Below are positions 12,532-45,865 of a stretch of DNA of 64,000 nucleotides, piece by piece. Under the pieces are notes generated by a model. It saw only the letters and a list, made by a program, of their open reading frames with translations. It made no database searches and was not told the DNA's origin. Location of the stretch: positions 124,001-188,000 of the IMG/VR virus record IMGVR_UViG_3300013116_000108; one strand, 5' to 3'. The translations under genes and the position numbers were made by a program. Each line of letters starts with the position of its first letter. Positions within the stretch are counted from its first letter, which is position 1.

Positions 12532-15500
12532 TTAAGCATCCTCAATCTCTAAAGCAGTAATCGAATCACCACTTACTAATTTAATTCTAACTAGGATAGT
12601 ATTACCTGTAGTGTTAGCCATATTCTCAGAACCAAGTGTTAATGTACTACTTTCATTTGATACTGTTGAACCTGTAGTTACTCTATCTCCTGGTGTATTA
12701 GCACAACCGTTTGATCCGTTACCACCTGCTCCTGTATTACTACCCGGAACACCTGATCCAGCGTAAGTATCTGTAGCATCTATCCAGCCATTTAAACCAC
12801 TAGCACTATCAATAGCAGAGCCAGGTGCCGCAATCCATACCCCTGATAACTTTCCACTAAACTTAAATTTAAAGTTAGCGGCCGGTGTTCTACGGAAAGC
12901 AAAAGTAAAGTATTGAGCTCCACTTCTTCCTGTTGATAAATCAGGACCTGCTGGTAAGTAGCCTGAACTTAAATCTGTTGTATAATGTTGTAATGTTCCA
13001 AATCTACAAATTGCTTCTTGTGTTCCTGCTACTGTAACAGCACCACTCCAAGCATTACTTGTATAATAATTTGTACTTCCTGTGAAACTAGGTGTATCAC
13101 TAGCAGTACCAAAGCCTGTAATTCTTACACCATCATCTGTATGTGTACTTCCGTTACCTAAACTATCTGAAATTGGAATACCTGCTTCATCGTCCATAGA
13201 TAATAATGTATTTGTGTATAACTGAATGTTTGTTGAACCTTCAGAATATGAACTAGTACCATTACAGTTACTAGCCCTTAATTTAATTCTTTGAACTGAG
13301 CGCCTTTGAGTACTTAAAAGAGGTACATTTAAAACGCCTAAAGTATAAGCACCACCAACACCTGTGTTTACTTTTGGTATTCCACTATCTAACATTGTTG
13401 TACTACCATCAATATTAGCGTATGTAAAATTCAAATTAGATATAACGTGTCCTGATGTTCCTTCTTGGTTACTACCTGGATCAACTTCAACTGGAGAACT
13501 TGTATCTTTATATGCTTGTCCTGTAAAGTTGGCTACCGTTGATCCTGTAATAGCAACACTAGGAGAACCTGTATTATAATAAGGTATACCTGAAATATAT
13601 CTAAATACTCCGTCTACTCCACCTGATATTGTTCCTATTGTTGCTGTAGGACTTGACGTCATATCATCTTTAACAATGTGAACTACATTAGTGTTTCCAC
13701 CTCCTGAACTTTCCAGTCTTTGAGCACTAGATCCAATACTATAATCAGATAATGCTTCAGTTATTTTTGCTGTTGCTACAAGATATGCTCTCTGTGGATA
13801 AGAAGAAACTACTTGATCATAATCTCTGTGATTTGTTATTACCAACGTGTCATCTGTTGTATTATTAGCACCACCTTCTGATGTTGTAAAAGTTCTAGCA
13901 CCTTTACTTACATTATTAATTTTTGATGTAAGTGTTTGATTTGTACCATCATAGTGGTTAGTTATAAAGTTTGACACAGTATTTGTGTCGAGTGTAGAAG
14001 TACTTGTATAACGTCTAGATGTTGATGTGCTTAACGAATCTCCTGGAGATTGAGATGTAAATGAACTTGTATTGTCTGTAAATCCATGACATAACTTTGG
14101 TGAACTTCCCTGGTATGAATCATTTAATGTTAAACTCTTAGTACTTAAATTTGCTGGTGCTGACGGTACAGAATTCATTTGGAATGTTATTCCTGTATAT
14201 GAATCTGATTGTGCTGTTATGTCTGGTGTAGCATTTACTGTAAGATTTAAATTATAATTACCTGCTGATTTTCCAGCATAGTTATGAGTTATAGCATTAC
14301 CAATAGTACCTGCTGTCGATCCGTCTTCAGTTGGTGTATCATTAGAACTTCCATCTGCCCAGTTAATTGTATAGTTGGCTCCTGTTACATTAGGACTAAC
14401 AGCATTAGTCATTGTAACTAACGCTCTGTTGTTTCCATCTAAATCTGTATAATCATATATGTCATATTGGTTATCACCACTTCCGTCACTTGTTGTTACA
14501 GCCGATGCTGTAGCACTTGCTCTCATATCAGGTTCAACGTGTACTGTAAAGTTTGATGTAGCAAAAGGTGAACTAGAGTGATCACTTAAAACTTCTAAAT
14601 AACCTGTGTAATCTACATTAGTACCAGCATTTTGTTGAGCATTAGTTAATGTATAAGTGTGACTTAAATTACTTGTGCCTGTATCTCCAGGTTGTCCACT
14701 ACCGGTGTTAACTGTTGTTGTAGTTCCATCACCCCAAGTATATCTGTATTGAATTCCGTATGTTGAATAAGAACCAATAGTTGATTCTGTATTGTTTGTA
14801 AATGTTACAGGGTGTCCACTTGTTCCTGCTTCGTTAATTCCGCTTGTACTTGACAACGATACTGTTGGTGTATGATCATCATAAATTTTATGTGATCTTG
14901 AAAGATCTGTTGGTACATCACTAGGTAGTGCTGTAGTGTGACTATCTAATGTTAATTCTACTGTTCTTGTTTGTTCTTGTTCAGTACTTGCTGTAAACGT
15001 GTGAGCAAGTCTGCCTCCACCTACACCGCCTGCTGAACTATCACTTGATATAACATCATTACTTGATCCATCACCCCATGCCCAAGTGTATTGAACTGTT
15101 GCTCCACTTGTATTTGTTGTATTATTCTGGAAGTAAATTGTAGCACCATCATCCCATTGTGTAATAGGTGAACCACCACTTGAGGCCGCGTATGCGGCAA
15201 AACCTACTACAGGAGTCGCTGTGTATATAACAATATAACTTGCTCTTGTTTTGCTTACACTTGAACCTGTTCCAGTACCATTATGATTTTTTGCTGTTAC
15301 TGTAACAGTAAAAGGTGAATTAGTATTTGAATTGTAAGTATGCGAAGGTGTACTATCTGATGTATTAGTTGTTGCTGTTTCTCCAGTACCCCAATCAATG
15401 TCATATCTTGTTGGATTGCCATCTGCTGTAATTGTAAGTGTTACTGTAGTACCAGCACCGCCTGATGTTACATCTGCTGAAAAATCAATATTTGTAACAG

Positions 15501-18255: not shown

Positions 18256-18633
18256 TTAGATAGCAACTATTGTCATTTTATTAACAGCAGAGTCATCCGA
18301 AATTGACCATGTGTATCTTACACCGTCAAAATCAGTACAAGATCTGTTGTACATTTTTTTGATATTTTTATAAGTTGTAGTACCGTTAATTACAGCAGAA
18401 ATAGACATTTCGTTAGCGCCTAAGTTCTCAGATGCTTTATCAACTAGTGTACATACACCTTCGTTACCTGAATCATCTTTAGCATCATCAACTAAAAATT
18501 TGTTTGATGATCTTTGTGATTTAATCATTCCTTGTACTGAAGCCGAGTTTGAACCTACTTTACAGTTAACATTAATGTTACCTGAATCTGTATCAACTTC
18601 ACCAAAGTGTTTTTTATTTACTGGACGTCCCAT
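18256..18633 (-). CDS. Hypothetical late protein, 125 aa (possible virion component)
   Basis: AGGAG SD, own late promoter and terminator. Confidence 0.75.
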   Translation of the reverse strand: MGRPVNKKHFGEVDTDSGNINVNCKVGSNSASVQGMIKSQRSSNKFLVDDAKDDSGNEGVCTLVDKASENLGANEMSISAVINGTTTYKNIKKMYNRSCTDFDGVRYTWSISDDSAVNKMTIVAI

Positions 18634-18722
18634 TTTTTTCTCCTAAGTTACGTTTTAAGTAATACGCGGTGGGTCAATTCCGCATAAGTCCACACCATTT
18701 GTGGCACGATTTTTGACAGTAG

Positions 18723-28520: not shown

Positions 28521-29447
28521 ATGAGTGATAAAGAAACAAATCAAGACATGCCAAAAATGGCTACAGAGATTGAAACACCAGAAAAGGCAGTTAATCCTTT
28601 GCAGGCATATTTTCGCAGACCAGCAATTTATGTCCAACTGCCAAGTGGCGGTAAGTTCAACGAGCCGGGCGAACTTGAAATTCCCGTTAACGGAGAAATT
28701 CCAGTTTATCCGATGACAGCAAAAGATGAAATCTTAATGAGAACACCTGATGCTTTAATGAACGGTGCTACTACAGTTGAAGTTATCCAAAGTTGTTGTC
28801 CAAACATTAAAAATGCTTGGAAATTAAGTGCGTTAGATATTGACTTAATTCTTGTTAGTATTAGAATTGCGACATACGGCGAGTCTACTGAAATTAAAGG
28901 TGTTTGTCCAAAATGTAACGAAGAAAACAATTACGAGTTAGATTTAAGAACTATTACAGACAAAGTAACACAACGTGAGTATAAACCGTCAATTACAGTT
29001 AGCGATTTAAAAATACATTTTAAACCATTAACTTACGAAGCAGTTACTAAAGAAGCAATTAAAAACTTTGAACAGCAAAGAATGATTCAAGGCCTTGCTA
29101 CTGATGATACATTAGCAGAACAGGATCGAATTAATAGATTCCAAGATGCTTTTGTAAGATTAACTGTTTATTCGGTTGGGATACTAGCAGAAGCAGTAGG
29201 TCATATTGAAATGGCAGATGGTACTAAAATTTCTGATAGGCAACAAATTAGTGAATTTATAGCAAACTGTGATCGAACAATTTACAATACAATTAAGACA
29301 CACTTAGAAGAAAGTAAAACTAATTCAACTATAGAACCTATCCAATTTGAATGTGCCGGTACTACTGACACAGAAGGAAAACATACACCTTGCGGTGAGA
29401 AATGGCAACAACCATTTACTATTGATAATTCAACTTTTTTCGGATAA
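28521..29447 (+). CDS. gp26: Baseplate hub assembly protein, T4 gp26-like
   Basis: NPL..YFRRP.IY..LPS.G, PMTAKDE, ID.ILV.IR.ATYG, CPKC motifs, C-terminal FF. Confidence 0.8.
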   Translation: MSDKETNQDMPKMATEIETPEKAVNPLQAYFRRPAIYVQLPSGGKFNEPGELEIPVNGEIPVYPMTAKDEILMRTPDALMNGATTVEVIQSCCPNIKNAWKLSALDIDLILVSIRIATYGESTEIKGVCPKCNEENNYELDLRTITDKVTQREYKPSITVSDLKIHFKPLTYEAVTKEAIKNFEQQRMIQGLATDDTLAEQDRINRFQDAFVRLTVYSVGILAEAVGHIEMADGTKISDRQQISEFIANCDRTIYNTIKTHLEESKTNSTIEPIQFECAGTTDTEGKHTPCGEKWQQPFTIDNSTFFG

Positions 29448-29671: not shown

Positions 29672-29741
29672 ATTCACAATTTAAACATAGTTAAACCAAA
29701 TAACATATTTTAATATAAAGACTACCTGTTTAAATATTCTT

Positions 29742-29930
29742 ATGTACACTCACTATAATGTCATTAATGAACGTACACGCGACGTATACTGTACTGTCTT
29801 TTCTCCAGAAGAAGCACAGCAAGTAATAGACATGCAAAAAATTAATCACCCGCATGAAAGTTTTATAGTTAAAAAAATAAAAACTAGTTCTATAAAACCA
29901 GGCTTTGGGAGAGATCCAGATTTACATTAG
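29742..29930 (+). CDS. Small hypothetical protein, 62 aa
   Basis: ATG exactly 5 nt after TAAATA. Confidence 0.6.
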   Translation: MYTHYNVINERTRDVYCTVFSPEEAQQVIDMQKINHPHESFIVKKIKTSSIKPGFGRDPDLH

Positions 29931-30031
29931 GTCAGACACATACGATTTAACAGAAGACGGGTATTGGGAAATACATTTTGTAGATGATCCATGCGACGAT
30001 GTTTCGCATTGGTTTTTATAAGTCAGAGTTT

Positions 30032-30458
30032 TCTGAAACATTAACAACATTAAAGAACAGTAATGTTATCAACTTCGTTGATAAGTTTTTTCGCTTTCGC
30101 TCAAAACATTTTTTAATTAGATATTAACGAAATAGTATTTCGTTATCATTCAGATATTTTATCCATACTTCGCCCGCTAGGGGCAAAGTAAGGTTGTCAT
30201 CATTCGAGTAACTCACCCATCATATCTAAGAAGATTTAGTATTACTACTAACGGAGGCGGCAACCCGCATACCCCCTACTTCAGCCTTCGCATTAGTCAC
30301 GGAACGTTATGTATATCGAGATATCCAACATACAAATCGCTGAGGTTGTGTCTGTTCTACAGAGCCTCATCTTTTAGCCTTGAAGTTAATTGGCCTTTAC
30401 TTGGTACAACCCAGATTCCGAACACGGGTGTCCGTGTCCTCAAGGGCATGTTTTCAGA
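30032..30458 (-). ncRNA. Candidate large structured RNA / cis-element (~430 nt), family unknown
   Basis: No ORF in track; >10 hairpins, with G-U pairs and GNRA loops favouring the minus strand; ends pair (TCTGAAAACAT / ATGTTTCAGA). Confidence 0.55.
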
Positions 30459-30471
30459 GTACCTATATAGT

Positions 30472-30519
30472 TGTTAAAAGTGCTGTTAAAAGTGCTATTA
30501 AAAATGCTGTTAATAGTAT
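30472..30519 (+). repeat. Four tandem 12-bp repeats (TGTTAAAAGTGC consensus)
   Basis: tgttaaaagtgc tgttaaaagtgc tattaaaaatgc tgttaatagtat. Confidence 0.8.
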
Positions 30520-30525
30520 GTTATA

Positions 30526-31038
30526 CTAGGCACATAATGTTTTAACTAAATCTGAATTTCTTGTAAAAAATTCTTCAAAGTCTGATATGCGCCAGTTAGA
30601 GCCTGTAGTGTTTGACCAATAGTCGATGTAGTTTTTTGCTTTTGATTTGTGTCTAGATTCGATTGCGATAAATTTGCCTACTTGATTGAATTTCATTATT
30701 AATATATTGAAGTCGCCTGTTTCTGCTACATCCATTAGTTGTGATATCCACTCTTCTAACATTGGGATAGGTTCTGGTTGTAATAGTCTGTGAAATGGGA
30801 ATTGTTTATAAAACTTACATTCCGCATTAAGTTTAGGAAAACTTTGTCCGGGAACAATATCACCCTTAAAGGCTCTTACTTGCCCTTCATGAAGTATTTC
30901 CATTCTTGCTTTATTAGACCCGCCCACGTAAGCACCGGATCCTGGAGCTCTTATAAACGATTCACCGTATAGTCCGGACAAGAATTTTGCGACATCTCGT
31001 TCCCAACCTGATCCTTTTGCTTTTTGTGGGCTTGGCAT
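30526..31038 (-). CDS. PD-(D/E)xK nuclease, Holliday junction resolvase-like
   Basis: KAKGSGWER.VA..L...R.PGSGA...GDIV...AECK motif. Confidence 0.75.
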   Translation of the reverse strand: MPSPQKAKGSGWERDVAKFLSGLYGESFIRAPGSGAYVGGSNKARMEILHEGQVRAFKGDIVPGQSFPKLNAECKFYKQFPFHRLLQPEPIPMLEEWISQLMDVAETGDFNILIMKFNQVGKFIAIESRHKSKAKNYIDYWSNTTGSNWRISDFEEFFTRNSDLVKTLCA

Positions 31039-31076
31039 AAATTTAAATTATTCTTTCTTATAAGAAAGAACCCTAA

Positions 31077-31256
31077 TTACATAGCGTTCTTTTTTTCTTG
31101 TATTTCTGCTCTACGTGACTTACCTAGTTTTGCTAATTCACCTAGTGCCTTACGAGCTCTAGTTGCCGCCGCCTTGTTTCCTTTTTCGTCAAACTTTGCC
31201 GCTTCTTCTACATAAGACTCATATGCTTGTGTTATTTGTTCATGTAATGTTGACAT
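31077..31256 (-). CDS. Histone H1-like (Hc1 family) small basic protein
   Basis: KF.EKGNKAAATRARKAL.EL.KL.K..R signature; start ATG 31256 with AAGGAG SD. Confidence 0.75.
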   Translation of the reverse strand: MSTLHEQITQAYESYVEEAAKFDEKGNKAAATRARKALGELAKLGKSRRAEIQEKKNAM

Positions 31257-31316
31257 TACTATCTCCTTTATATAAAGGCTGTACATACAGCCATTGTTAT
31301 TTAATGTTATAGGTAC

Positions 31317-31880
31317 CTACGACAGCGATTTCTGAACTATTTCTTTAATCTCGTCCCACGAGTTGAAACAATCTAACTGAAATTGCCATCTACTATCAGG
31401 AGAATAATTAACGCCGTGGCGATGTCCACCAGCATTAATAAATGTTATTTTTGTATAATTGTGATCGTATAATAATTCGTCGTTTTCGTTATACCATTGA
31501 ATTCTCTGAGGAAATGATAATGGAATTATTAATCCAGCAGGCCTAAAATGGTCTTGATGTATATCAACTTGTGTAGCAGTTTCTTGAAAATTAGTTCTTA
31601 CTAGTTGGAATCCTGCCTGTCCACTACCGGGCATACTTTCATCTTTTTCAAAGTTAAATTTTAATCCAAATTTTTCAAAATACCTAACCCAATAATCTAC
31701 AATAGGTTCTTTTAAAATTGCTGGATTATAAACAACTTCTAACCCTAACGGTATACCGTGTTTACTATGATACATTTCAAATTCATTATCATACTTGTCG
31801 TACAAATACGAAAACTCATCTATGTTGTATCCTATAGGAGTTTCTATTACAAAATTATCTTTGGTTCGTTCAGTGTACAA
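31317..31880 (-). CDS. Putative 2OG-Fe(II) oxygenase / cupin-fold protein
   Basis: HQD...H.V...R spacing of the HxD..H facial triad; TTG start uncertain. Confidence 0.5.
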   Translation of the reverse strand: MYTERTKDNFVIETPIGYNIDEFSYLYDKYDNEFEMYHSKHGIPLGLEVVYNPAILKEPIVDYWVRYFEKFGLKFNFEKDESMPGSGQAGFQLVRTNFQETATQVDIHQDHFRPAGLIIPLSFPQRIQWYNENDELLYDHNYTKITFINAGGHRHGVNYSPDSRWQFQLDCFNSWDEIKEIVQKSLS

Positions 31881-33703
31881 GTTAATGTCTGCCTTATTTT
31901 AAAGTTATCGCTGACTCTATCACTTCCTTCTAGAAGCATATGAGCAGTAGTTGATGTAGCGCCATTTAATGTTGGCGTAAATTCTATTGTTGTTTTTCTT
32001 CTTACATCATGTATAAAGTCATAGTTAAATGTTTTAGTAATTGGATATTCAACATCATAATCAAATAGTCTAGCATCGCAATACTTAATAAGTTCTGTTA
32101 AGATGTCTTTATCAATGCTGTATTGCTCGAGAAATGTTTTTGCTTCAGCATAAAACTCATCTCGTTTTTCTGTTAAGTTTTCTCTGTAGCCTAAACTTTG
32201 ACTTGCTAATCCAAATACATAATCGTCTATTCTTCCTTTTGCTTTATCAAAATGTTTTCTAATTAAACCGTTACTGTTAATAACATAATTGTACCAGTCG
32301 TTATAAAATTCTTTTTTAGATACAATATTTTCTCTATCTAAATAATCTGCGGCATCACGTAAAAAATTAAATTCGTGTCCTGTTCTTGTAGTCCATGTCC
32401 ATTCCCAGATATGTTTTAAGTCATCTTCCGATAGCCATTTTGTAGAAACTACAAGTTCAATATCTTCTTTTGTTTCTTCGTTTAGTACTCCAGGAAAAGG
32501 TTTACGAATAGTTTTAAATCCAAACTCTTCTCTACTTTTTCTGCTACCTAATTCAGCATTTGGTAATAATGCTAAAGGATATAGATATGTTGTTAATTCT
32601 TGATAATTTGTAATTTCTAAATATGTGTCTTTCCAACTATCTACTGTTTCTCCGGGATTACCTACAATAAGTTCACAGTCAAATGGCAAACCTAATTCAG
32701 CACAACGTTTAGCAAAATATTCATAATCGTTACTATCCATATTATCACGTTTTATAAGTTCTAATGCTAATGGTGTTAGTGTTTGTAAACTCATAATAAA
32801 ACTTTTAATAAGTCCGGCATCATACATTTTCTTTGCTATTTGTAAAATGTGTTCGTTGGCATTTTTTGCCCAGTTAACAAAGAATGTTTTAGGATAACCG
32901 TATTTCTTTTTTGTAGCGATAATCATATCAGCAATAGCATTATCTCTATCTTTTAAAATACCAAAGTTAGCATCAACACTATACAAGAATCCTATTTTAT
33001 TTTTACCCGCATATTCTATTTCTGCTTCTAATCTGTTAATGTCGTGATTAACTAGTTTACTATATGTAAGTCCTCCCCAATCACAAAATGAACAAGCATA
33101 AGGACATCCTCTGTTTGTTTCAAACAGCATAGCATGATGTGATTTTATCTTAGGCATTGAGCCTGACAAATAAGGACTTGGTAATTTACTTAAATCACGT
33201 TGTCTAGTTACTCTTTTATTATCTGCTACATTATTAGTCCAATGTGTTCCAAAGTTAACAGCAGTATTAGGTTGTGTGTCAATGTATTCTTTATTTGGAT
33301 TTAGTAATATGTTTTTAAATATTTCTTCTCCTTCTTGGAAAACAACAACGTCAACATACTTGTGACCGTTCCACCATTCATGTTTGCTGTCTTGCGGAAC
33401 TTGTGGACCACCGTAAATAATCATACACTCTGGCCAACGTTTTTTAATTTTTTCTGCTAGTTGGTTAGTAAAATTTTCATTCCAAATGTAAACACTAAAT
33501 CCAAATATAAAAGGATCTACTATTTCGTTTACTATTTCGTCAATGTCTTTCTTTTCATAATAAAGACCTGCTAATTGATAATTGTTTTTAACTTGTTCAT
33601 CTAATTCAGCATAAGTCCATAACCCGGCAACACTATACGGCAAGAATTTATGATTGCCAGGGTTAATAGTCATACTAAAGTTTGCTAGATAAACATTTTT
33701 CAT
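31847..33703 (-). CDS. Cobalamin-binding radical SAM enzyme
   Basis: N-terminal B12-binding-like region (GFSVYIWN, IIYGGPQ, EGE) and ETNRGCPYACSFCDWG CxxxCxxC motif. Confidence 0.9.
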   Translation of the reverse strand: MKNVYLANFSMTINPGNHKFLPYSVAGLWTYAELDEQVKNNYQLAGLYYEKKDIDEIVNEIVDPFIFGFSVYIWNENFTNQLAEKIKKRWPECMIIYGGPQVPQDSKHEWWNGHKYVDVVVFQEGEEIFKNILLNPNKEYIDTQPNTAVNFGTHWTNNVADNKRVTRQRDLSKLPSPYLSGSMPKIKSHHAMLFETNRGCPYACSFCDWGGLTYSKLVNHDINRLEAEIEYAGKNKIGFLYSVDANFGILKDRDNAIADMIIATKKKYGYPKTFFVNWAKNANEHILQIAKKMYDAGLIKSFIMSLQTLTPLALELIKRDNMDSNDYEYFAKRCAELGLPFDCELIVGNPGETVDSWKDTYLEITNYQELTTYLYPLALLPNAELGSRKSREEFGFKTIRKPFPGVLNEETKEDIELVVSTKWLSEDDLKHIWEWTWTTRTGHEFNFLRDAADYLDRENIVSKKEFYNDWYNYVINSNGLIRKHFDKAKGRIDDYVFGLASQSLGYRENLTEKRDEFYAEAKTFLEQYSIDKDILTELIKYCDARLFDYDVEYPITKTFNYDFIHDVRRKTTIEFTPTLNGATSTTAHMLLEGSDRVSDNFKIRQTLTCTLNEPKIIL

Positions 33704-45663: not shown

Positions 45664-45793
45664 TTTTATCAGAATTTTTCTTTGCTAATGGCCTAGCAAC
45701 ACTATCTTTTGAACGTTTTCTAAGTTGTGCTAAAGCACTTGCTTTACGTTTTAGTTCTGCTAAGGGTTTCTTTAAATCCCATTTAAAGTTCAT
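45653..45793 (-). CDS. Small basic peptide, 46 aa (below ORF-track cutoff)
   Basis: MNFKWDLKKPLAELKRKASALAQLRKRSKDSVARPLAKKNSDKTSK; strong AAGGAGG SD; follows riboswitch. Confidence 0.7.
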   Translation of the reverse strand: MNFKWDLKKPLAELKRKASALAQLRKRSKDSVARPLAKKNSDKTSK

Positions 45794-45816: not shown

Positions 45817-45865
45817 GGTGCGTTCCTTCGGCGTATGCCTACTTCCGGCCTAATGGCTGAACGGT
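45817..45865 (-). promoter_or_regulatory. Glutamine riboswitch (glnA / Downstream-peptide type)
   Basis: ACCGTTCA-GCC-ATTA-GGC-CGGAAGTA-GGC-ATAC-GCC-GAAG-GAACGC: P1 CGTTC/GAACG, two short stems, GGAAGTA/GAAG core of the glnA motif. Confidence 0.8.

What the first reader, a model, noticed from the sequence alone, without database searches (positions are those of the whole stretch)
30032..30458. ~430-nt densely structured element with paired ends, downstream of the resolvase-like nuclease
Seen (minus strand): 5' TCTGAAAACAT (30448-30458) can pair with 3' ATGTTTCAGA (30032-30041). This encloses a CCTTGAG/TTCAAGG multibranch containing GGACACGG-ACAC-CCGTGTTC, then TGAGG/CCTCA containing TCTGT-AGA-ACAGA, and TGTATGTTG/CGATATACA. 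Next come GCGG-GTTG-CCGC, TTAGTA-GTAA-TACTAA and TACTTTGCCC-CTAGC-GGGCGAAGTA, flanked by twin GAATGATRAC motifs, then TAACGAAATA-C-TATTTCGTTA, a GAAA-loop stem and TTATCAAC-GAA-GTTGATAA. It is the largest non-coding gap in a gene-dense window, at a convergence of transcription. I could not find group I P7/J8-7 or group II domain V motifs. Inference: a large phage ncRNA co-transcribed with the Hc1-like and nuclease genes (possibly an RNP partner), or an RNA-primed replication origin/packaging signal.
Basis: partly seen in the sequence, partly recalled or inferred. Interest (0 to 1): 0.78.

Follow-up and report, generated by a model that had tools for sequence, protein, structure and literature searches.

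The report
New large pseudoknotted phage RNA gene
The flagged stretch is a real gene for a roughly 400-base, elaborately folded non-coding RNA of an undescribed family, found in many uncultured marine phages and, as several copies per genome, in cultured jumbo phages of E. coli, Pseudomonas and relatives, so its unknown job can now be tested in the lab.

Summary
On the minus strand, about 30066-30470, lies a structured RNA just downstream of the PD-(D/E)XK resolvase gene. It matches no Rfam family.

- **Family size:** homologs occur in 109 IMG/VR loci (72 distinct sequences) and in 63 of the 120 metagenome stretches returned.
- **Structure:** in the core, 93.6% of cells are paired against about 47% in slid controls. 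22 of 37 pairs show two-sided compensatory changes.
- **Strand:** G-U outnumbers A-C pairs 232 to 22 in the core, which fixes the RNA strand.
the "paired ends" and the GCGG/CCGC hairpin are not conserved. The real core is an H-type pseudoknot, GUGAC/GUUGC crossing GGGGG/CCUCC.
- **Expression:** metatranscriptome contigs cover Hc1-like gene, nuclease and RNA together.
- **Cultured relatives:** distant homologs with the same pseudoknot geometry lie in ORF-free gaps of PA5oct, CBB and XaC1. Rak2-like phages carry 3-5 copies per genome. One PA5oct copy lies inside the published transcript "ncRNA004". One copy each in CBB and PA5oct sits in the same resolvase-RNA-hub position as here.

The function is unknown. 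My best guess is a trans-acting RNA scaffold, RNP core or ribozyme.

The parts
30066..30470 (-). Whole conserved structured RNA (5' domain, pseudoknotted core, 3' domain)
   Evidence: nhmmer family alignments cover this span. Covariation. Single copy in the 204-kb record.
30403..30463 (-). 5' domain closed by P1: GGUAC 30459-30463 with GUACC 30403-30407
   Evidence: P1 is GCUAC/GUAGC in L002 and L004 and GCAAC/GUUGC in the main marine clade.
30420..30439 (-).
   Evidence: Compensatory changes in L002, L004 and L005. The hairpin varies in length across the family.
30376..30445 (-).
   Evidence: Both sequences are conserved in two clades. There is no covariation, and the test against shuffled partners was uninformative.
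30369..30373 (-). P5 5' strand AAGAU, closing the core domain
   Evidence: Pairs with AUCUU at 30231-30235. Nearly invariant, 98.7% of cells paired.
30342..30368 (-). H1: GAGG/CCUC with the conserved loop GCUCUG-UAGAA-CAGA
   Evidence: 4 of 4 pairs covary. The same loop motif with GAAG/CUUC, GAUG/CAUC or GUUG/CAAC stems occurs in the three PA5oct copies.
30305..30339 (-). H2 hairpin (outer CG/CG, inner UGUAUGUUG/CGAUAUACA)
   Evidence: 9 of 10 pairs have two-sided changes.
30296..30304 (-). Invariant UUCCG, then the pseudoknot PK2 5' strand GUGAC (30296-30300)
   Evidence: PK2 is 100% paired in 53 sequences and 4 of 5 pairs covary. The same helix is present in all 9 jumbo-phage copies examined.
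30253..30282 (-). Invariant GAAGUAGGGGG (30272-30282), PK2 3' strand GUUGC (30260-30264) and CCGCCUCC (30253-30260). P8 is GGGGG/CCUCC, crossing PK2.
   Evidence: Invariant in the marine family. P8 is confirmed by covariation in jumbo copies: GGAAG/CUUCC, AGAAG/CUUCU, GAGAG/CUUUC, ACUGG/CCAGU, UGAGG/CCUCG.
30231..30251 (-). H5 hairpin UUAGUA-GUAA-UACUAA (30236-30251) and P5 3' strand within AAUCUUCUU (30228-30236)
   Evidence: 5 of 6 H5 pairs covary. AAUCUUCUU is invariant.
30196..30210 (-). Twin motif A (UACUCGAAUGAUGAC)
   Evidence: It varies in parallel with motif B across 50 sequences.
30166..30190 (-). H7 hairpin UACUUUGCCC-CUAGC-GGGCGAAGUA
   Evidence: 95.6% of cells paired, 4 pairs with two-sided changes.
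30142..30155 (-). Twin motif B (AUCUGAAUGAUAAC)
   Evidence: No complementary partner in the RNA, its flanks or the 204-kb record.
30125..30145 (-). H8 hairpin UAACGAAAUA-C-UAUUUCGUUA
   Evidence: A hairpin at this position has 5 of 5 pairs covarying and 81% of cells paired.
30085..30107 (-). H9: GUUUU-GA-GC-GAAA-GC-GA-AAAAC (tandem G.A pairs plus GNRA loop)
   Evidence: The outer stem covaries in 5 of 5 pairs. It is only 69-72% paired because clade V pairs this segment differently.
30066..30084 (-). H10 terminal hairpin UUAUCAAC-GAA-GUUGAUAA
   Evidence: 100% paired, 6 of 7 pairs covary. No U tract follows it.
30032..30041 (-).
   Evidence: Absent in L003 and L004 and not present in the family.
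30526..31038 (-). Upstream PD-(D/E)XK nuclease or resolvase gene (170 aa)
   Evidence: Pfam PF24608, E = 1.4e-22. PHROG 'RusA-like Holliday junction resolvase'.
31077..31286 (-). Hc1-like small basic protein gene (69 aa)
   Evidence: Pfam PF07432, E = 1.6e-14. Conserved in the marine clades, 35% identity to the L043 homolog.
29991..30009 (+). Terminator-like hairpin ending the converging plus-strand genes

Best explanation
**Shown**
- Window 30066-30470 (minus strand) is a gene for a roughly 400-nt non-coding RNA. Selection acts on its fold.
- The fold has three parts: a multi-helix 5' domain; a core closed by AAGAU/AUCUU that holds two hairpins, an H-type pseudoknot (GUGAC/GUUGC crossing GGGGG/CCUCC) and about 45 invariant unpaired or junction bases; and a 3' domain of five hairpins carrying two copies of a co-varying 8-12-nt motif.
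- It belongs to a previously undescribed family. Marine large myoviruses carry one copy, always in the order resolvase, RNA, baseplate-hub operon. Cultured jumbo phages (Rak2-like phages, PA5oct) carry several copies.
- RNA of this region is present in marine metatranscriptomes.

**Inferred**
- In this phage the RNA is made as the 3' part of the Hc1-like/resolvase transcript. In PA5oct each copy examined has its own consensus sigma-70 promoter.
- The RNA works in trans as a folded molecule.
- The invariant pseudoknotted core is a binding or active site for a partner that is the same in all these phages and hosts. The variable periphery, including the twin motifs, tunes a lineage-specific bivalent contact.
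- The most likely kind of mechanism is therefore an RNP core, scaffold or decoy. A ribozyme is the main alternative.
For: - **Fold:** z = -3.9 on the minus strand against -1.8 on the plus strand.
- **Family size:** 109 IMG/VR loci giving 72 distinct sequences, plus 63 of the 120 metagenome stretches returned.
- **Core covariation:** 93.6% of cells paired against about 47% in slid controls. 22 of 37 pairs have two-sided changes. Covariation score 0.469 against 0.05-0.09.
- **3' domain covariation:** 80.7% paired against 35-41% in slid controls, with 29 of 38 pairs changing on both sides.
- **Strand:** G-U to A-C pairs are 335:83 overall and 232:22 in the core.
- **Independence from the nuclease:** the invariant stretches persist although the upstream nuclease has been swapped between unrelated families.
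- **Expression:** metatranscriptome contigs cover the Hc1-like gene, nuclease and RNA but not the flanks.
- **Cultured relatives:** covariance model R1 hits ORF-free gaps in PA5oct, CBB and XaC1. All 9 jumbo copies examined have the same PK2/P8 pseudoknot. In the six CBB and XaC1 copies the spacing also matches (span 34-37 nt, L2 of 7-8 nt); in PA5oct the long loop is expanded. P8 was not modelled as pairs in R1, yet it is compensated.
- **Synteny:** copies lie in the resolvase-hub gap of both CBB and PA5oct.
- **Published transcript:** one PA5oct copy lies inside the RNA-seq-defined ncRNA004.
- **Promoters:** 12/12 sigma-70 consensus promoters precede two PA5oct copies.
- **Not a known family:** no Rfam family matches any member.
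Against: - No partner, activity or phenotype is known.
- The link between the marine and jumbo groups rests on modest, roughly calibrated CM scores (E = 0.001-0.6 per genome), shared topology and synteny. A sequence-only profile of the jumbo copies does not find the marine family.
- Contigs from RNA libraries cannot define transcript ends and may include DNA.
- No promoter or canonical terminator was found for the RNA in this window.
- Repeated GCGAA/UUCGC segments allow alternative pairings. This would fit a switching or cis-regulatory element as well as a scaffold.
- PA5oct ncRNA004 is weakly expressed, at 0.02-0.08% of phage reads.
Confidence: 0.55

Rival explanations
1. The RNA is a ribozyme. 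The invariant pseudoknotted core would be a catalytic centre, for self-processing from the resolvase transcript or for another RNA or phosphoryl-transfer reaction, and the peripheral domains would stabilise it.
For: - Its size, the roughly 45 invariant junction nucleotides, the H-type pseudoknot, the GNRA loops and tandem G.A motifs, and a variable periphery around a fixed core all resemble large ribozymes.
- In the marine clades the RNA abuts the nuclease stop codon, so release by cleavage would make sense.
Against: - No match to any ribozyme family.
- No conserved cleavage-site context was identified.
- The jumbo copies have their own promoters, so they would not need self-processing at the 5' end.
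Confidence: 0.17
2. The RNA is a structured pre-primer or origin RNA of the ColE1 RNA II type. It would fold, form a persistent hybrid with the template and prime replication, which would explain several dispersed copies in jumbo genomes.
For: - Rak2-like genomes carry 3-5 dispersed copies, and PA5oct has strong promoters in front of two copies.
- Alternative pairings exist among the GCGAA/UUCGC segments.
- The RNA sits next to recombination and replication genes. In Phosso an RNase HI gene lies beside the syntenic 1-kb gap.
Against: - Known primer RNAs do not show this degree of pseudoknotted, invariant core.
- No composition or skew signal separable from gene orientation was seen.
- T4-type origins need no conserved RNA fold (established knowledge).
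Confidence: 0.1
3. The element acts in cis as a 3'-UTR element. It would stabilise or regulate the Hc1-like/resolvase mRNA, or insulate converging transcription, possibly by switching between alternative folds.
For: - In the marine clades it directly follows the nuclease ORF and is present on the same metatranscriptome contigs.
- Competing complementary segments exist.
Against: - In CBB and PA5oct the syntenic copy is divergent from the resolvase gene, and other copies lie among unrelated genes with their own promoters.
- 400 nt with an invariant core is far more than mRNA protection needs.
Confidence: 0.1
4. The element is a guide or adaptor RNA for the adjacent small nuclease. The twin, lineage-specific motifs would be two identical targeting segments for a dimeric resolvase-type enzyme.
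For: - A nuclease gene sits immediately next to the RNA in all 61 marine loci that have upstream sequence.
- The GIY-YIG partner is a bare catalytic domain of 140-150 aa.
- The twin motifs co-vary in parallel.
Against: - Three unrelated nuclease folds occupy the site.
- The same GIY-YIG family is common in cultured phages. In Melnitz, the closest cultured match and the only genome checked, no RNA is found.
- Jumbo paralogs lack any adjacent nuclease.
- No complementary target was found in the genome.
Confidence: 0.05
5. It is not an RNA at all but a protein-coding or purely DNA-level element (iterons, a pac site, or chance structure).
For: - Short ORFs of 30-47 aa overlap the region.
- The twin motifs could be read as repeated protein-binding sites.
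Against: - Close relatives differ by 1-2-nt indels, and changes are compensatory across helices.
- The strand-specific G-U excess is 335:83.
- RNA-library contigs cover the region.
Confidence: 0.02

Closest known systems
PA5oct 'ncRNA004' (Lood et al. 2020, PMC7318152), a transcribed ORF-free region at 246116-246734 of Pseudomonas phage PA5oct
   Same: It holds a paralog with the same elements in the same order: AAAGGAU, H1 with the GCUCUGGUCGAAACAGAG loop, UUCCG, PK2 (GGCAU/GUGCC) and P8 (UGAGG/CCUCA). It is experimental evidence that a family member is transcribed.
   Different: It was reported only as a read-covered region, with no structure, family or function. It is longer (619 nt), has a roughly 100-nt insertion in the pseudoknot's long loop and a different periphery. 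It is not adjacent to a resolvase.
GOLLD and ROOL RNAs (large ornate RNAs common in phages and prophages)
   Same: They are large, heavily structured, phage-borne and of unknown function. They have a conserved core with variable periphery.
   Different: There is no sequence or model similarity, and the Rfam models give no hit. This RNA is smaller (about 400-600 nt). It has a different genomic context (resolvase/baseplate hub rather than tRNA clusters). It is multi-copy in jumbo phages. Whether it forms multimers is untested.
Glutamine (glnA) riboswitch, one of which lies in this same window at 45817-45865
   Same: It shares the GAAGUAGG string, which forms an E-loop in glnA RNA (established knowledge), and it is also a pseudoknotted fold.
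   Different: The glnA model hits only the true riboswitch and not the element, even at E up to 10. The element is 8 times larger and is not upstream of a regulated gene.
ColE1 RNA II pre-primer
   Same: It is about 550 nt, is multi-hairpin, uses alternative folds that decide function, and contains a G-rich segment.
   Different: RNA II has no conserved pseudoknot core of this kind. No origin has been mapped here. The resemblance is conceptual only.
omega-RNA, reRNA and bridge RNAs of IscB, TnpB and IS110 (structured RNAs encoded next to a nuclease or recombinase)
   Same: A structured RNA of 200-400 nt abuts a small nuclease gene, and it has lineage-specific short segments.
   Different: The neighbouring enzymes are PD-(D/E)XK, GIY-YIG or EndoVII resolvase-type nucleases rather than RuvC/TnpB/IscB or DEDD. 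There are no transposon ends. The adjacency is lost in the paralogs.

Membership tests
The family defined here (marine clade, Rak2-like and PA5oct copies, including PA5oct ncRNA004) | (U/A)CCG followed by a 5-bp helix PK2 that crosses a 5-bp helix P8 ending at C-CGC-P8'. L2 is about 7 nt and the span about 35-40 nt where the long loop has no insertion. | tested here: met
   Window: GUGAC/GUUGC and GGGGG/CCUCC, span 39 nt, L2 of 7 nt. The same holds in 7 marine representatives and in 9 jumbo copies, with covarying PK2 and P8.
The family defined here | Core closed by AAAGAU/AUCUU and holding H1 with a GCUCUG...GAAA...AG loop and an H2 hairpin | tested here: met
   for the marine members. for the three PA5oct copies. 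The CBB and XaC1 copies align only partly here.
The family defined here | Gene order resolvase, RNA, small ORF, baseplate hub, with the RNA converging on the hub operon (the orthologous copy) | tested here: met
   Window. CBB copy at 174477-174995 between EndoVII and the hub. PA5oct copy at 75989-76363 between the resolvase and the hub. In marine clade C the hub gene is inverted.
Any Rfam 15 family (including GOLLD, ROOL, HEARO, OLE, raiA, RNase P, 6S, SRP, riboswitches and small ribozymes) | A covariance-model match at the gathering score, or at least a suggestive E-value | tested here: not met
   Nothing at the gathering score in the window region or in 13 other members. Only chance-level hits up to E = 10 in the region. 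Nothing at E of 0.1 or below in the jumbo copies.
tmRNA (including the two-piece form known from related marine myophages) | A tRNA-like domain with acceptor and T arm, and a tag reading frame | tested here: not met
   ARAGORN finds no tRNA or tmRNA in the whole window. No Rfam tmRNA hit.
Group I intron | Interrupts a gene, with the strand order P3-[P4-P6]-P7-P3'-P8-P7' | tested here: not met
   The nuclease and Hc1-like ORFs are complete and only 38 nt apart. The strand order here is PK2-P8-PK2'-P8' with the hairpin after both, not between them. No Intron_gpI hit at E up to 10. The G-binding site could not be tested.
Group II intron | Domain V hairpin with the AGC triad and a bulge, six-domain wheel, flanking exons | tested here: not met
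   No Rfam group II hit. H9 (GAGC-GAAA-GCGA) has only 9-10 pairs, has no bulge and covaries as a simple hairpin.
Glutamine riboswitch or Downstream-peptide motif | Three-stem junction with an E-loop and pseudoknot that matches RF01739 | tested here: not met
   RF01739 hits 45817-45865 at 58 bits but not the element. Only the string GAAGUAGG is shared.
Guide RNAs of RNA-guided nucleases (omega-RNA/reRNA) | Obligate adjacency to a TnpB, IscB or Cas-type effector, with a variable guide at one end | tested here: not met
   The neighbours are PD-(D/E)XK, GIY-YIG or EndoVII. The paralogs have no nuclease neighbour. No target was found for the variable motifs.
ColE1-type primer RNA or phage origin transcript | Transcript that forms an R-loop at a mapped origin and is processed to a primer | not testable with these tools
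   No replication-initiation data are available. Composition profiles are dominated by gene orientation.

The most novel reading that the evidence does not exclude
The family is a new class of large ribozyme or RNA-centred machine of big phages. The invariant H-type pseudoknot core would carry out or nucleate a biochemical activity, such as RNA processing, nucleotide chemistry or capture of a host factor. That activity would be needed by marine myoviruses and by Rak2-like and PA5oct jumbo phages alike, and the twin co-varying motifs would act as a bivalent specificity element.
Probability: 0.2. Interest if true: 0.95.

Novelty: categorically new. Interest (0 to 1): 0.82.

Why it matters
- **Rarity:** large RNAs with pseudoknotted, sequence-invariant cores are rare. 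Those whose function has been solved are ribozymes, RNP cores or ligand sensors.
- **Undescribed:** this one is absent from Rfam and from the literature I could search. One PA5oct copy was noted only as a transcribed gap.
- **Abundance:** it is common in ocean phage contigs and is expressed in marine metatranscriptomes.
- **Tractable systems:** it is present as 3-5 copies in more than 60 sequenced, cultured jumbo phages of E. coli, Salmonella, Klebsiella, Erwinia, Yersinia, Pectobacterium and Xanthomonas, and it also occurs in Pseudomonas phage PA5oct. Two PA5oct copies sit behind consensus sigma-70 promoters. A metagenomic curiosity therefore becomes a question that ordinary phage genetics and biochemistry can answer.
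- **Annotation:** it corrects annotation in those phages, where tiny 'hypothetical proteins' are called inside the RNA genes. It also shows that three unrelated resolvase families have replaced each other beside a conserved RNA gene.

Tried and rejected
- blastn of three family members against cultured phages found nothing.
- A pattern scan of 185,579 prokaryote genomes returned 63 stretches, and nhmmer confirmed one full-length member: a 23-kb contig binned as Legionellales. The four Pelagibacter hits are one coding sequence and lack the rest of the motif. A cellular origin is therefore rejected.
- The tmRNA idea, prompted by related marine myophages, is rejected by ARAGORN and Rfam.
- Melnitz, Phosso and Atu_ph07 give no hit with nhmmer or the CM.
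- The search for a complement of the twin motifs found none in the RNA, in the flanks of 50 loci, or in the own 204-kb record, where 31 loose matches compare with 59 for the control pattern. Intramolecular pairing or a self-encoded antisense target is not supported.
- The test of the CUUGAG:CUUAGG pseudoknot against shuffled partners was uninformative.
- An nhmmer profile of the jumbo copies does not retrieve the marine family.
- I did not attempt a reciprocal CM. The shared piece is short, and the pseudoknot cannot be modelled as nested pairs.
- Complex prediction with the Hc1-like protein and the RNA was not folded by the tool, so it gives no evidence either way.
- Searches of the literature for the invariant strings, in the IMG/VR structured-RNA survey, in a 2026 coevolution-mining preprint and in a jumbo-phage review found no description.
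- A naive all-against-all pairing scan on the raw MAFFT alignment was too noisy. I replaced it with anchored sub-alignments.
Full report
**1. What is at the locus**

The window belongs to a 204,100-bp IMG/VR virus record, estimated 56% complete. The element is present there once.

On the minus strand the gene order is:
- a B12-binding radical-SAM gene (31847-33703);
- an unknown 187-aa ORF;
- an Hc1-like 69-aa gene (31077-31286; Pfam PF07432);
- a 170-aa PD-(D/E)XK nuclease (30526-31038; PF24608; PHROG 'Holliday junction resolvase');
- the ORF-poor stretch in question.

Converging on it from the plus strand are a baseplate-hub gene (28521-29447), two small ORFs and a terminator-like hairpin at 29991-30009.

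The stretch is richer in G+C (0.39-0.43) than its surroundings (about 0.30-0.35).

**2. Check of the observation**

The minus strand folds 3.9 sd better than dinucleotide shuffles, and the plus strand only 1.8 sd better. No Rfam family matches, either at gathering scores across the window or at E up to 10 within the region. ARAGORN finds no tRNA or tmRNA.

**3. Relatives**

The nuclease protein led to six close IMG/VR relatives that keep the element, with visible compensatory changes.

A pattern built from two invariant strings, GAAGTAGGGGG...AATCTTCTT, hit 102 viral stretches where about two would be expected by chance. An nhmmer profile confirmed 109 loci with 72 distinct sequences and an effective number of about 39.

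In prokaryote genomes the only full-length member is one 23-kb contig binned as Legionellales; the four Pelagibacter hits are a single coding sequence.

Synteny is strict in the marine loci: a radical-SAM or 2OG-oxygenase gene, the Hc1-like gene, a small nuclease, then the RNA within -10 to +63 nt of the nuclease stop, then the hub gene.

The nuclease is of two unrelated kinds. It is a 140-150-aa SegE-type GIY-YIG domain in 50 loci and PD-(D/E)XK in 11 loci, including the window. The Hc1-like protein is conserved across clades.

**4. Structure**

On a 53-sequence alignment of the core, the structure I derived has 93.6% of cells paired. Controls with the partner slid by 1-3 columns give about 47%. 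22 of 37 pairs have two-sided changes, and the covariation score is 0.469 against 0.05-0.09.

The core consists of:
- P5: AAGAU 30369-30373 with AUCUU 30231-30235.
- H1: 30342-30368.
- H2: 30305-30339.
- The invariant UUCCG.
- PK2: GUGAC 30296-30300 with GUUGC 30260-30264. It is 100% paired and 4 of 5 pairs covary.
- P8: GGGGG 30272-30276 with CCUCC 30253-30257. It is invariant in the marine family and crosses PK2.
- H5: 30236-30251.

Its loop is the 3' strand of PK2, and GCGG/CCGC is not maintained, for example in L087.

The 3' domain is 80.7% paired against 35-41% in controls, with 29 of 38 pairs changing on both sides. H7 is 95.6% paired, H8 81%, H9 69-72% and H10 100%.

The 5' domain is closed by P1 (GGUAC/GUACC here, GCUAC/GUAGC in L002, GCAAC/GUUGC in the main clade).

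The conserved RNA ends at H10, at 30066.

G-U pairs outnumber A-C pairs 335 to 83, and 232 to 22 in the core. Selection therefore acts on an RNA transcribed from the minus strand and not on DNA.

**5. Unexplained features**

The pairs seen include:
- AGAUGAUG with AGAUGAUG;
- ACAUGA with ACAUGA;
- AGAUAAUG with AGAUAAUG;
- GAAUGAU with GAAUGAU;
- GCGAAUAG with GCGAAUAG;
- GUAAGAUA with GUAAGAUA;
- AGCAGA with AGCAGA.

No complementary segment exists in the RNA, in the flanks or in the 204-kb record.

Likewise, the junction segment GCGAAG (30286-30291) varies in parallel with the 3' strand of H7. Both are complementary to the 5' strand of H7 and to the CUUCG loop of H8, so alternative pairings are possible.

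**6. Expression**

Contigs from four independent marine metatranscriptome studies cover:
- 30094-31038 (nuclease plus RNA; 947 nt);
- 30231-31313 (Hc1-like gene, nuclease and the 5' half of the RNA; 1081 nt);
- 30217-30495;
- 30121-30326 (an exact match).

The radical-SAM side (31348-32400) and the plus-strand ORF side (29740-30007) are uncovered.

This fits a transcript running from the Hc1-like gene through the RNA. It does not define transcript ends, and DNA carry-over cannot be excluded.

**7. Link to cultured phages**

The hub and resolvase proteins place this virus near the jumbo phages PA5oct, CBB/Rak2-like, XaC1, Atu_ph07 and Phosso.

A covariance model of the core (R1) scored 137 bits on the window. 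It also hit three cultured phages, each time on the sense strand of a gap 563-911 nt long without ORFs:
- PA5oct 13108-13319, E = 0.02;
- CBB 336575-336727, E = 0.001;
- XaC1 303567-303685, E = 0.6.

Melnitz, Phosso and Atu_ph07 gave nothing.

The CBB gap sequence finds 250 places in 62 Rak2-like phage records, with 3-5 copies per genome among the records listed. CBB has five copies, one of them exactly between EndoVII and the small-ORF/hub operon and converging on the hub as in the window.

PA5oct has three copies. One lies between its resolvase and hub genes. Another lies inside ncRNA004, a region defined by RNA-seq as transcribed and ORF-free.

All nine copies examined carry (U/A)CCG followed by PK2 crossing P8. 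The helix sequences are:
- PK2: GUUGU/ACAAC, GUUAC/GUAAC, GUUGC/GCAAC, GGGAU/GUCCC, GGCAU/GUGCC, GGGAG/CUCCC.
- P8: GGAAG/CUUCC, AGAAG/CUUCU, GAGAG/CUUUC, ACUGG/CCAGU, UGAGG/CCUCG, UGAGG/CCUCA, UGAGU/GCUCA.

In CBB and XaC1 the spacing matches the marine family: span 34-37 nt and L2 of 7-8 nt. In the PA5oct copies the long loop is expanded (span 50-200 nt, L2 of 4-12 nt).

R1 modelled P8 as unpaired columns. The compensated P8 helices are therefore independent support for homology, and they give P8 the covariation it lacks in the marine clade.

Two PA5oct copies are preceded by 12/12 consensus sigma-70 promoters. Rfam finds nothing in these copies.

Caveats:
- R1's E-values are rough.
- A sequence-only profile of the jumbo copies does not recover the marine family.
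- The peripheries differ, and in CBB4 and CBB5 they seem rearranged.

**8. Interpretation**

It is firmly shown that this is a functional, folded RNA of a new family. How it works is inference.

- It is not a cis-regulator of one gene. The downstream hub gene is inverted between clades and appears to have its own AATAAATA late-type promoter in clade C. The jumbo copies sit among unrelated genes.
- It is not tied to one nuclease, because three nuclease folds occupy the neighbouring site.
- The invariant core, kept while proteins around it are replaced, argues for interaction with something common to all these phage-host systems, or for catalysis.
- The co-varying twin motifs argue for a lineage-specific bivalent contact.

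I therefore favour a trans-acting RNP core, scaffold or decoy. A ribozyme comes second and a structured primer RNA third. The probabilities are given in the rival list.

**9. Novelty**

I found no Rfam family and no paper that describes this RNA. The only prior trace is PA5oct 'ncRNA004', listed as a transcribed region.

Noticed in passing
window 45817-45865 (-), ORF start at 45793: A bona fide glutamine riboswitch (RF01739, 58 bits) lies directly upstream of a Shine-Dalgarno sequence and a small ORF (MNFKWDLKK...).
   Followed up: partly
window 18631-18705 (-): A match to the 'freshwater-2' RNA motif just above its gathering score (51.3 against 49.9 bits).
   Followed up: no
window 30471-30512 (-): Between the nuclease stop and the RNA lies a short tandem repeat (about 12-nt units, AGCACUUUUAAC). 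Its copy number and sequence differ among the closest relatives: it is absent in L002-L004 and has different units in L005.
   Followed up: no
window 30526-31038; L023 7715-8140; CBB NC_041878 173868-174344: Three unrelated nuclease families occupy the same position next to the conserved RNA gene in related phages: PD-(D/E)XK, SegE-type GIY-YIG and EndoVII. This looks like non-orthologous replacement of the resolvase.
   Followed up: partly
L374 and L375 (CBB copies 4 and 5) compared with L371-L373: The segment ...AUAGAUCCGUCCAAAAUUUGAG... lies before the pseudoknot in CBB copies 1-3 but after it in copy 4, and similarly in copy 5. This suggests permuted or rearranged paralogs.
   Followed up: no
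L229/L380 (PA5oct 75700-77180): The tiny annotated ORFs gp338-gp341 (117-153 nt) lie in or beside the syntenic RNA copy, behind a perfect sigma-70 promoter. They are probably not protein genes.
   Followed up: partly
L230 (Sinorhizobium phage Phosso 229759-230772): A 1-kb unannotated gap lies between the resolvase gene and an RNase HI gene, in the syntenic position. The core model R1 found no match there.
   Followed up: partly
window 30251-30293, metatranscriptome run X20: A 2,699-nt RNA-library contig (depth 17.6) matches only the invariant core. It is most likely a different family member, also present in an RNA library.
   Followed up: no
L197 (contig PBLX01000043.1, MAG labelled Legionellales): This 23-kb contig carries a full-length family member (260 bits). 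It is probably a phage contig binned into a bacterial MAG.
   Followed up: no
L165 4440-4480 (Methylophilales phage Melnitz): After the Melnitz GIY-YIG homolog there is no RNA. The string CAUAGCAAC, which is the 5' start of the RNA in the main marine clade, is followed by GUUG and a TATAAATA late-promoter-like box. This could be a remnant or a coincidence.
   Followed up: no
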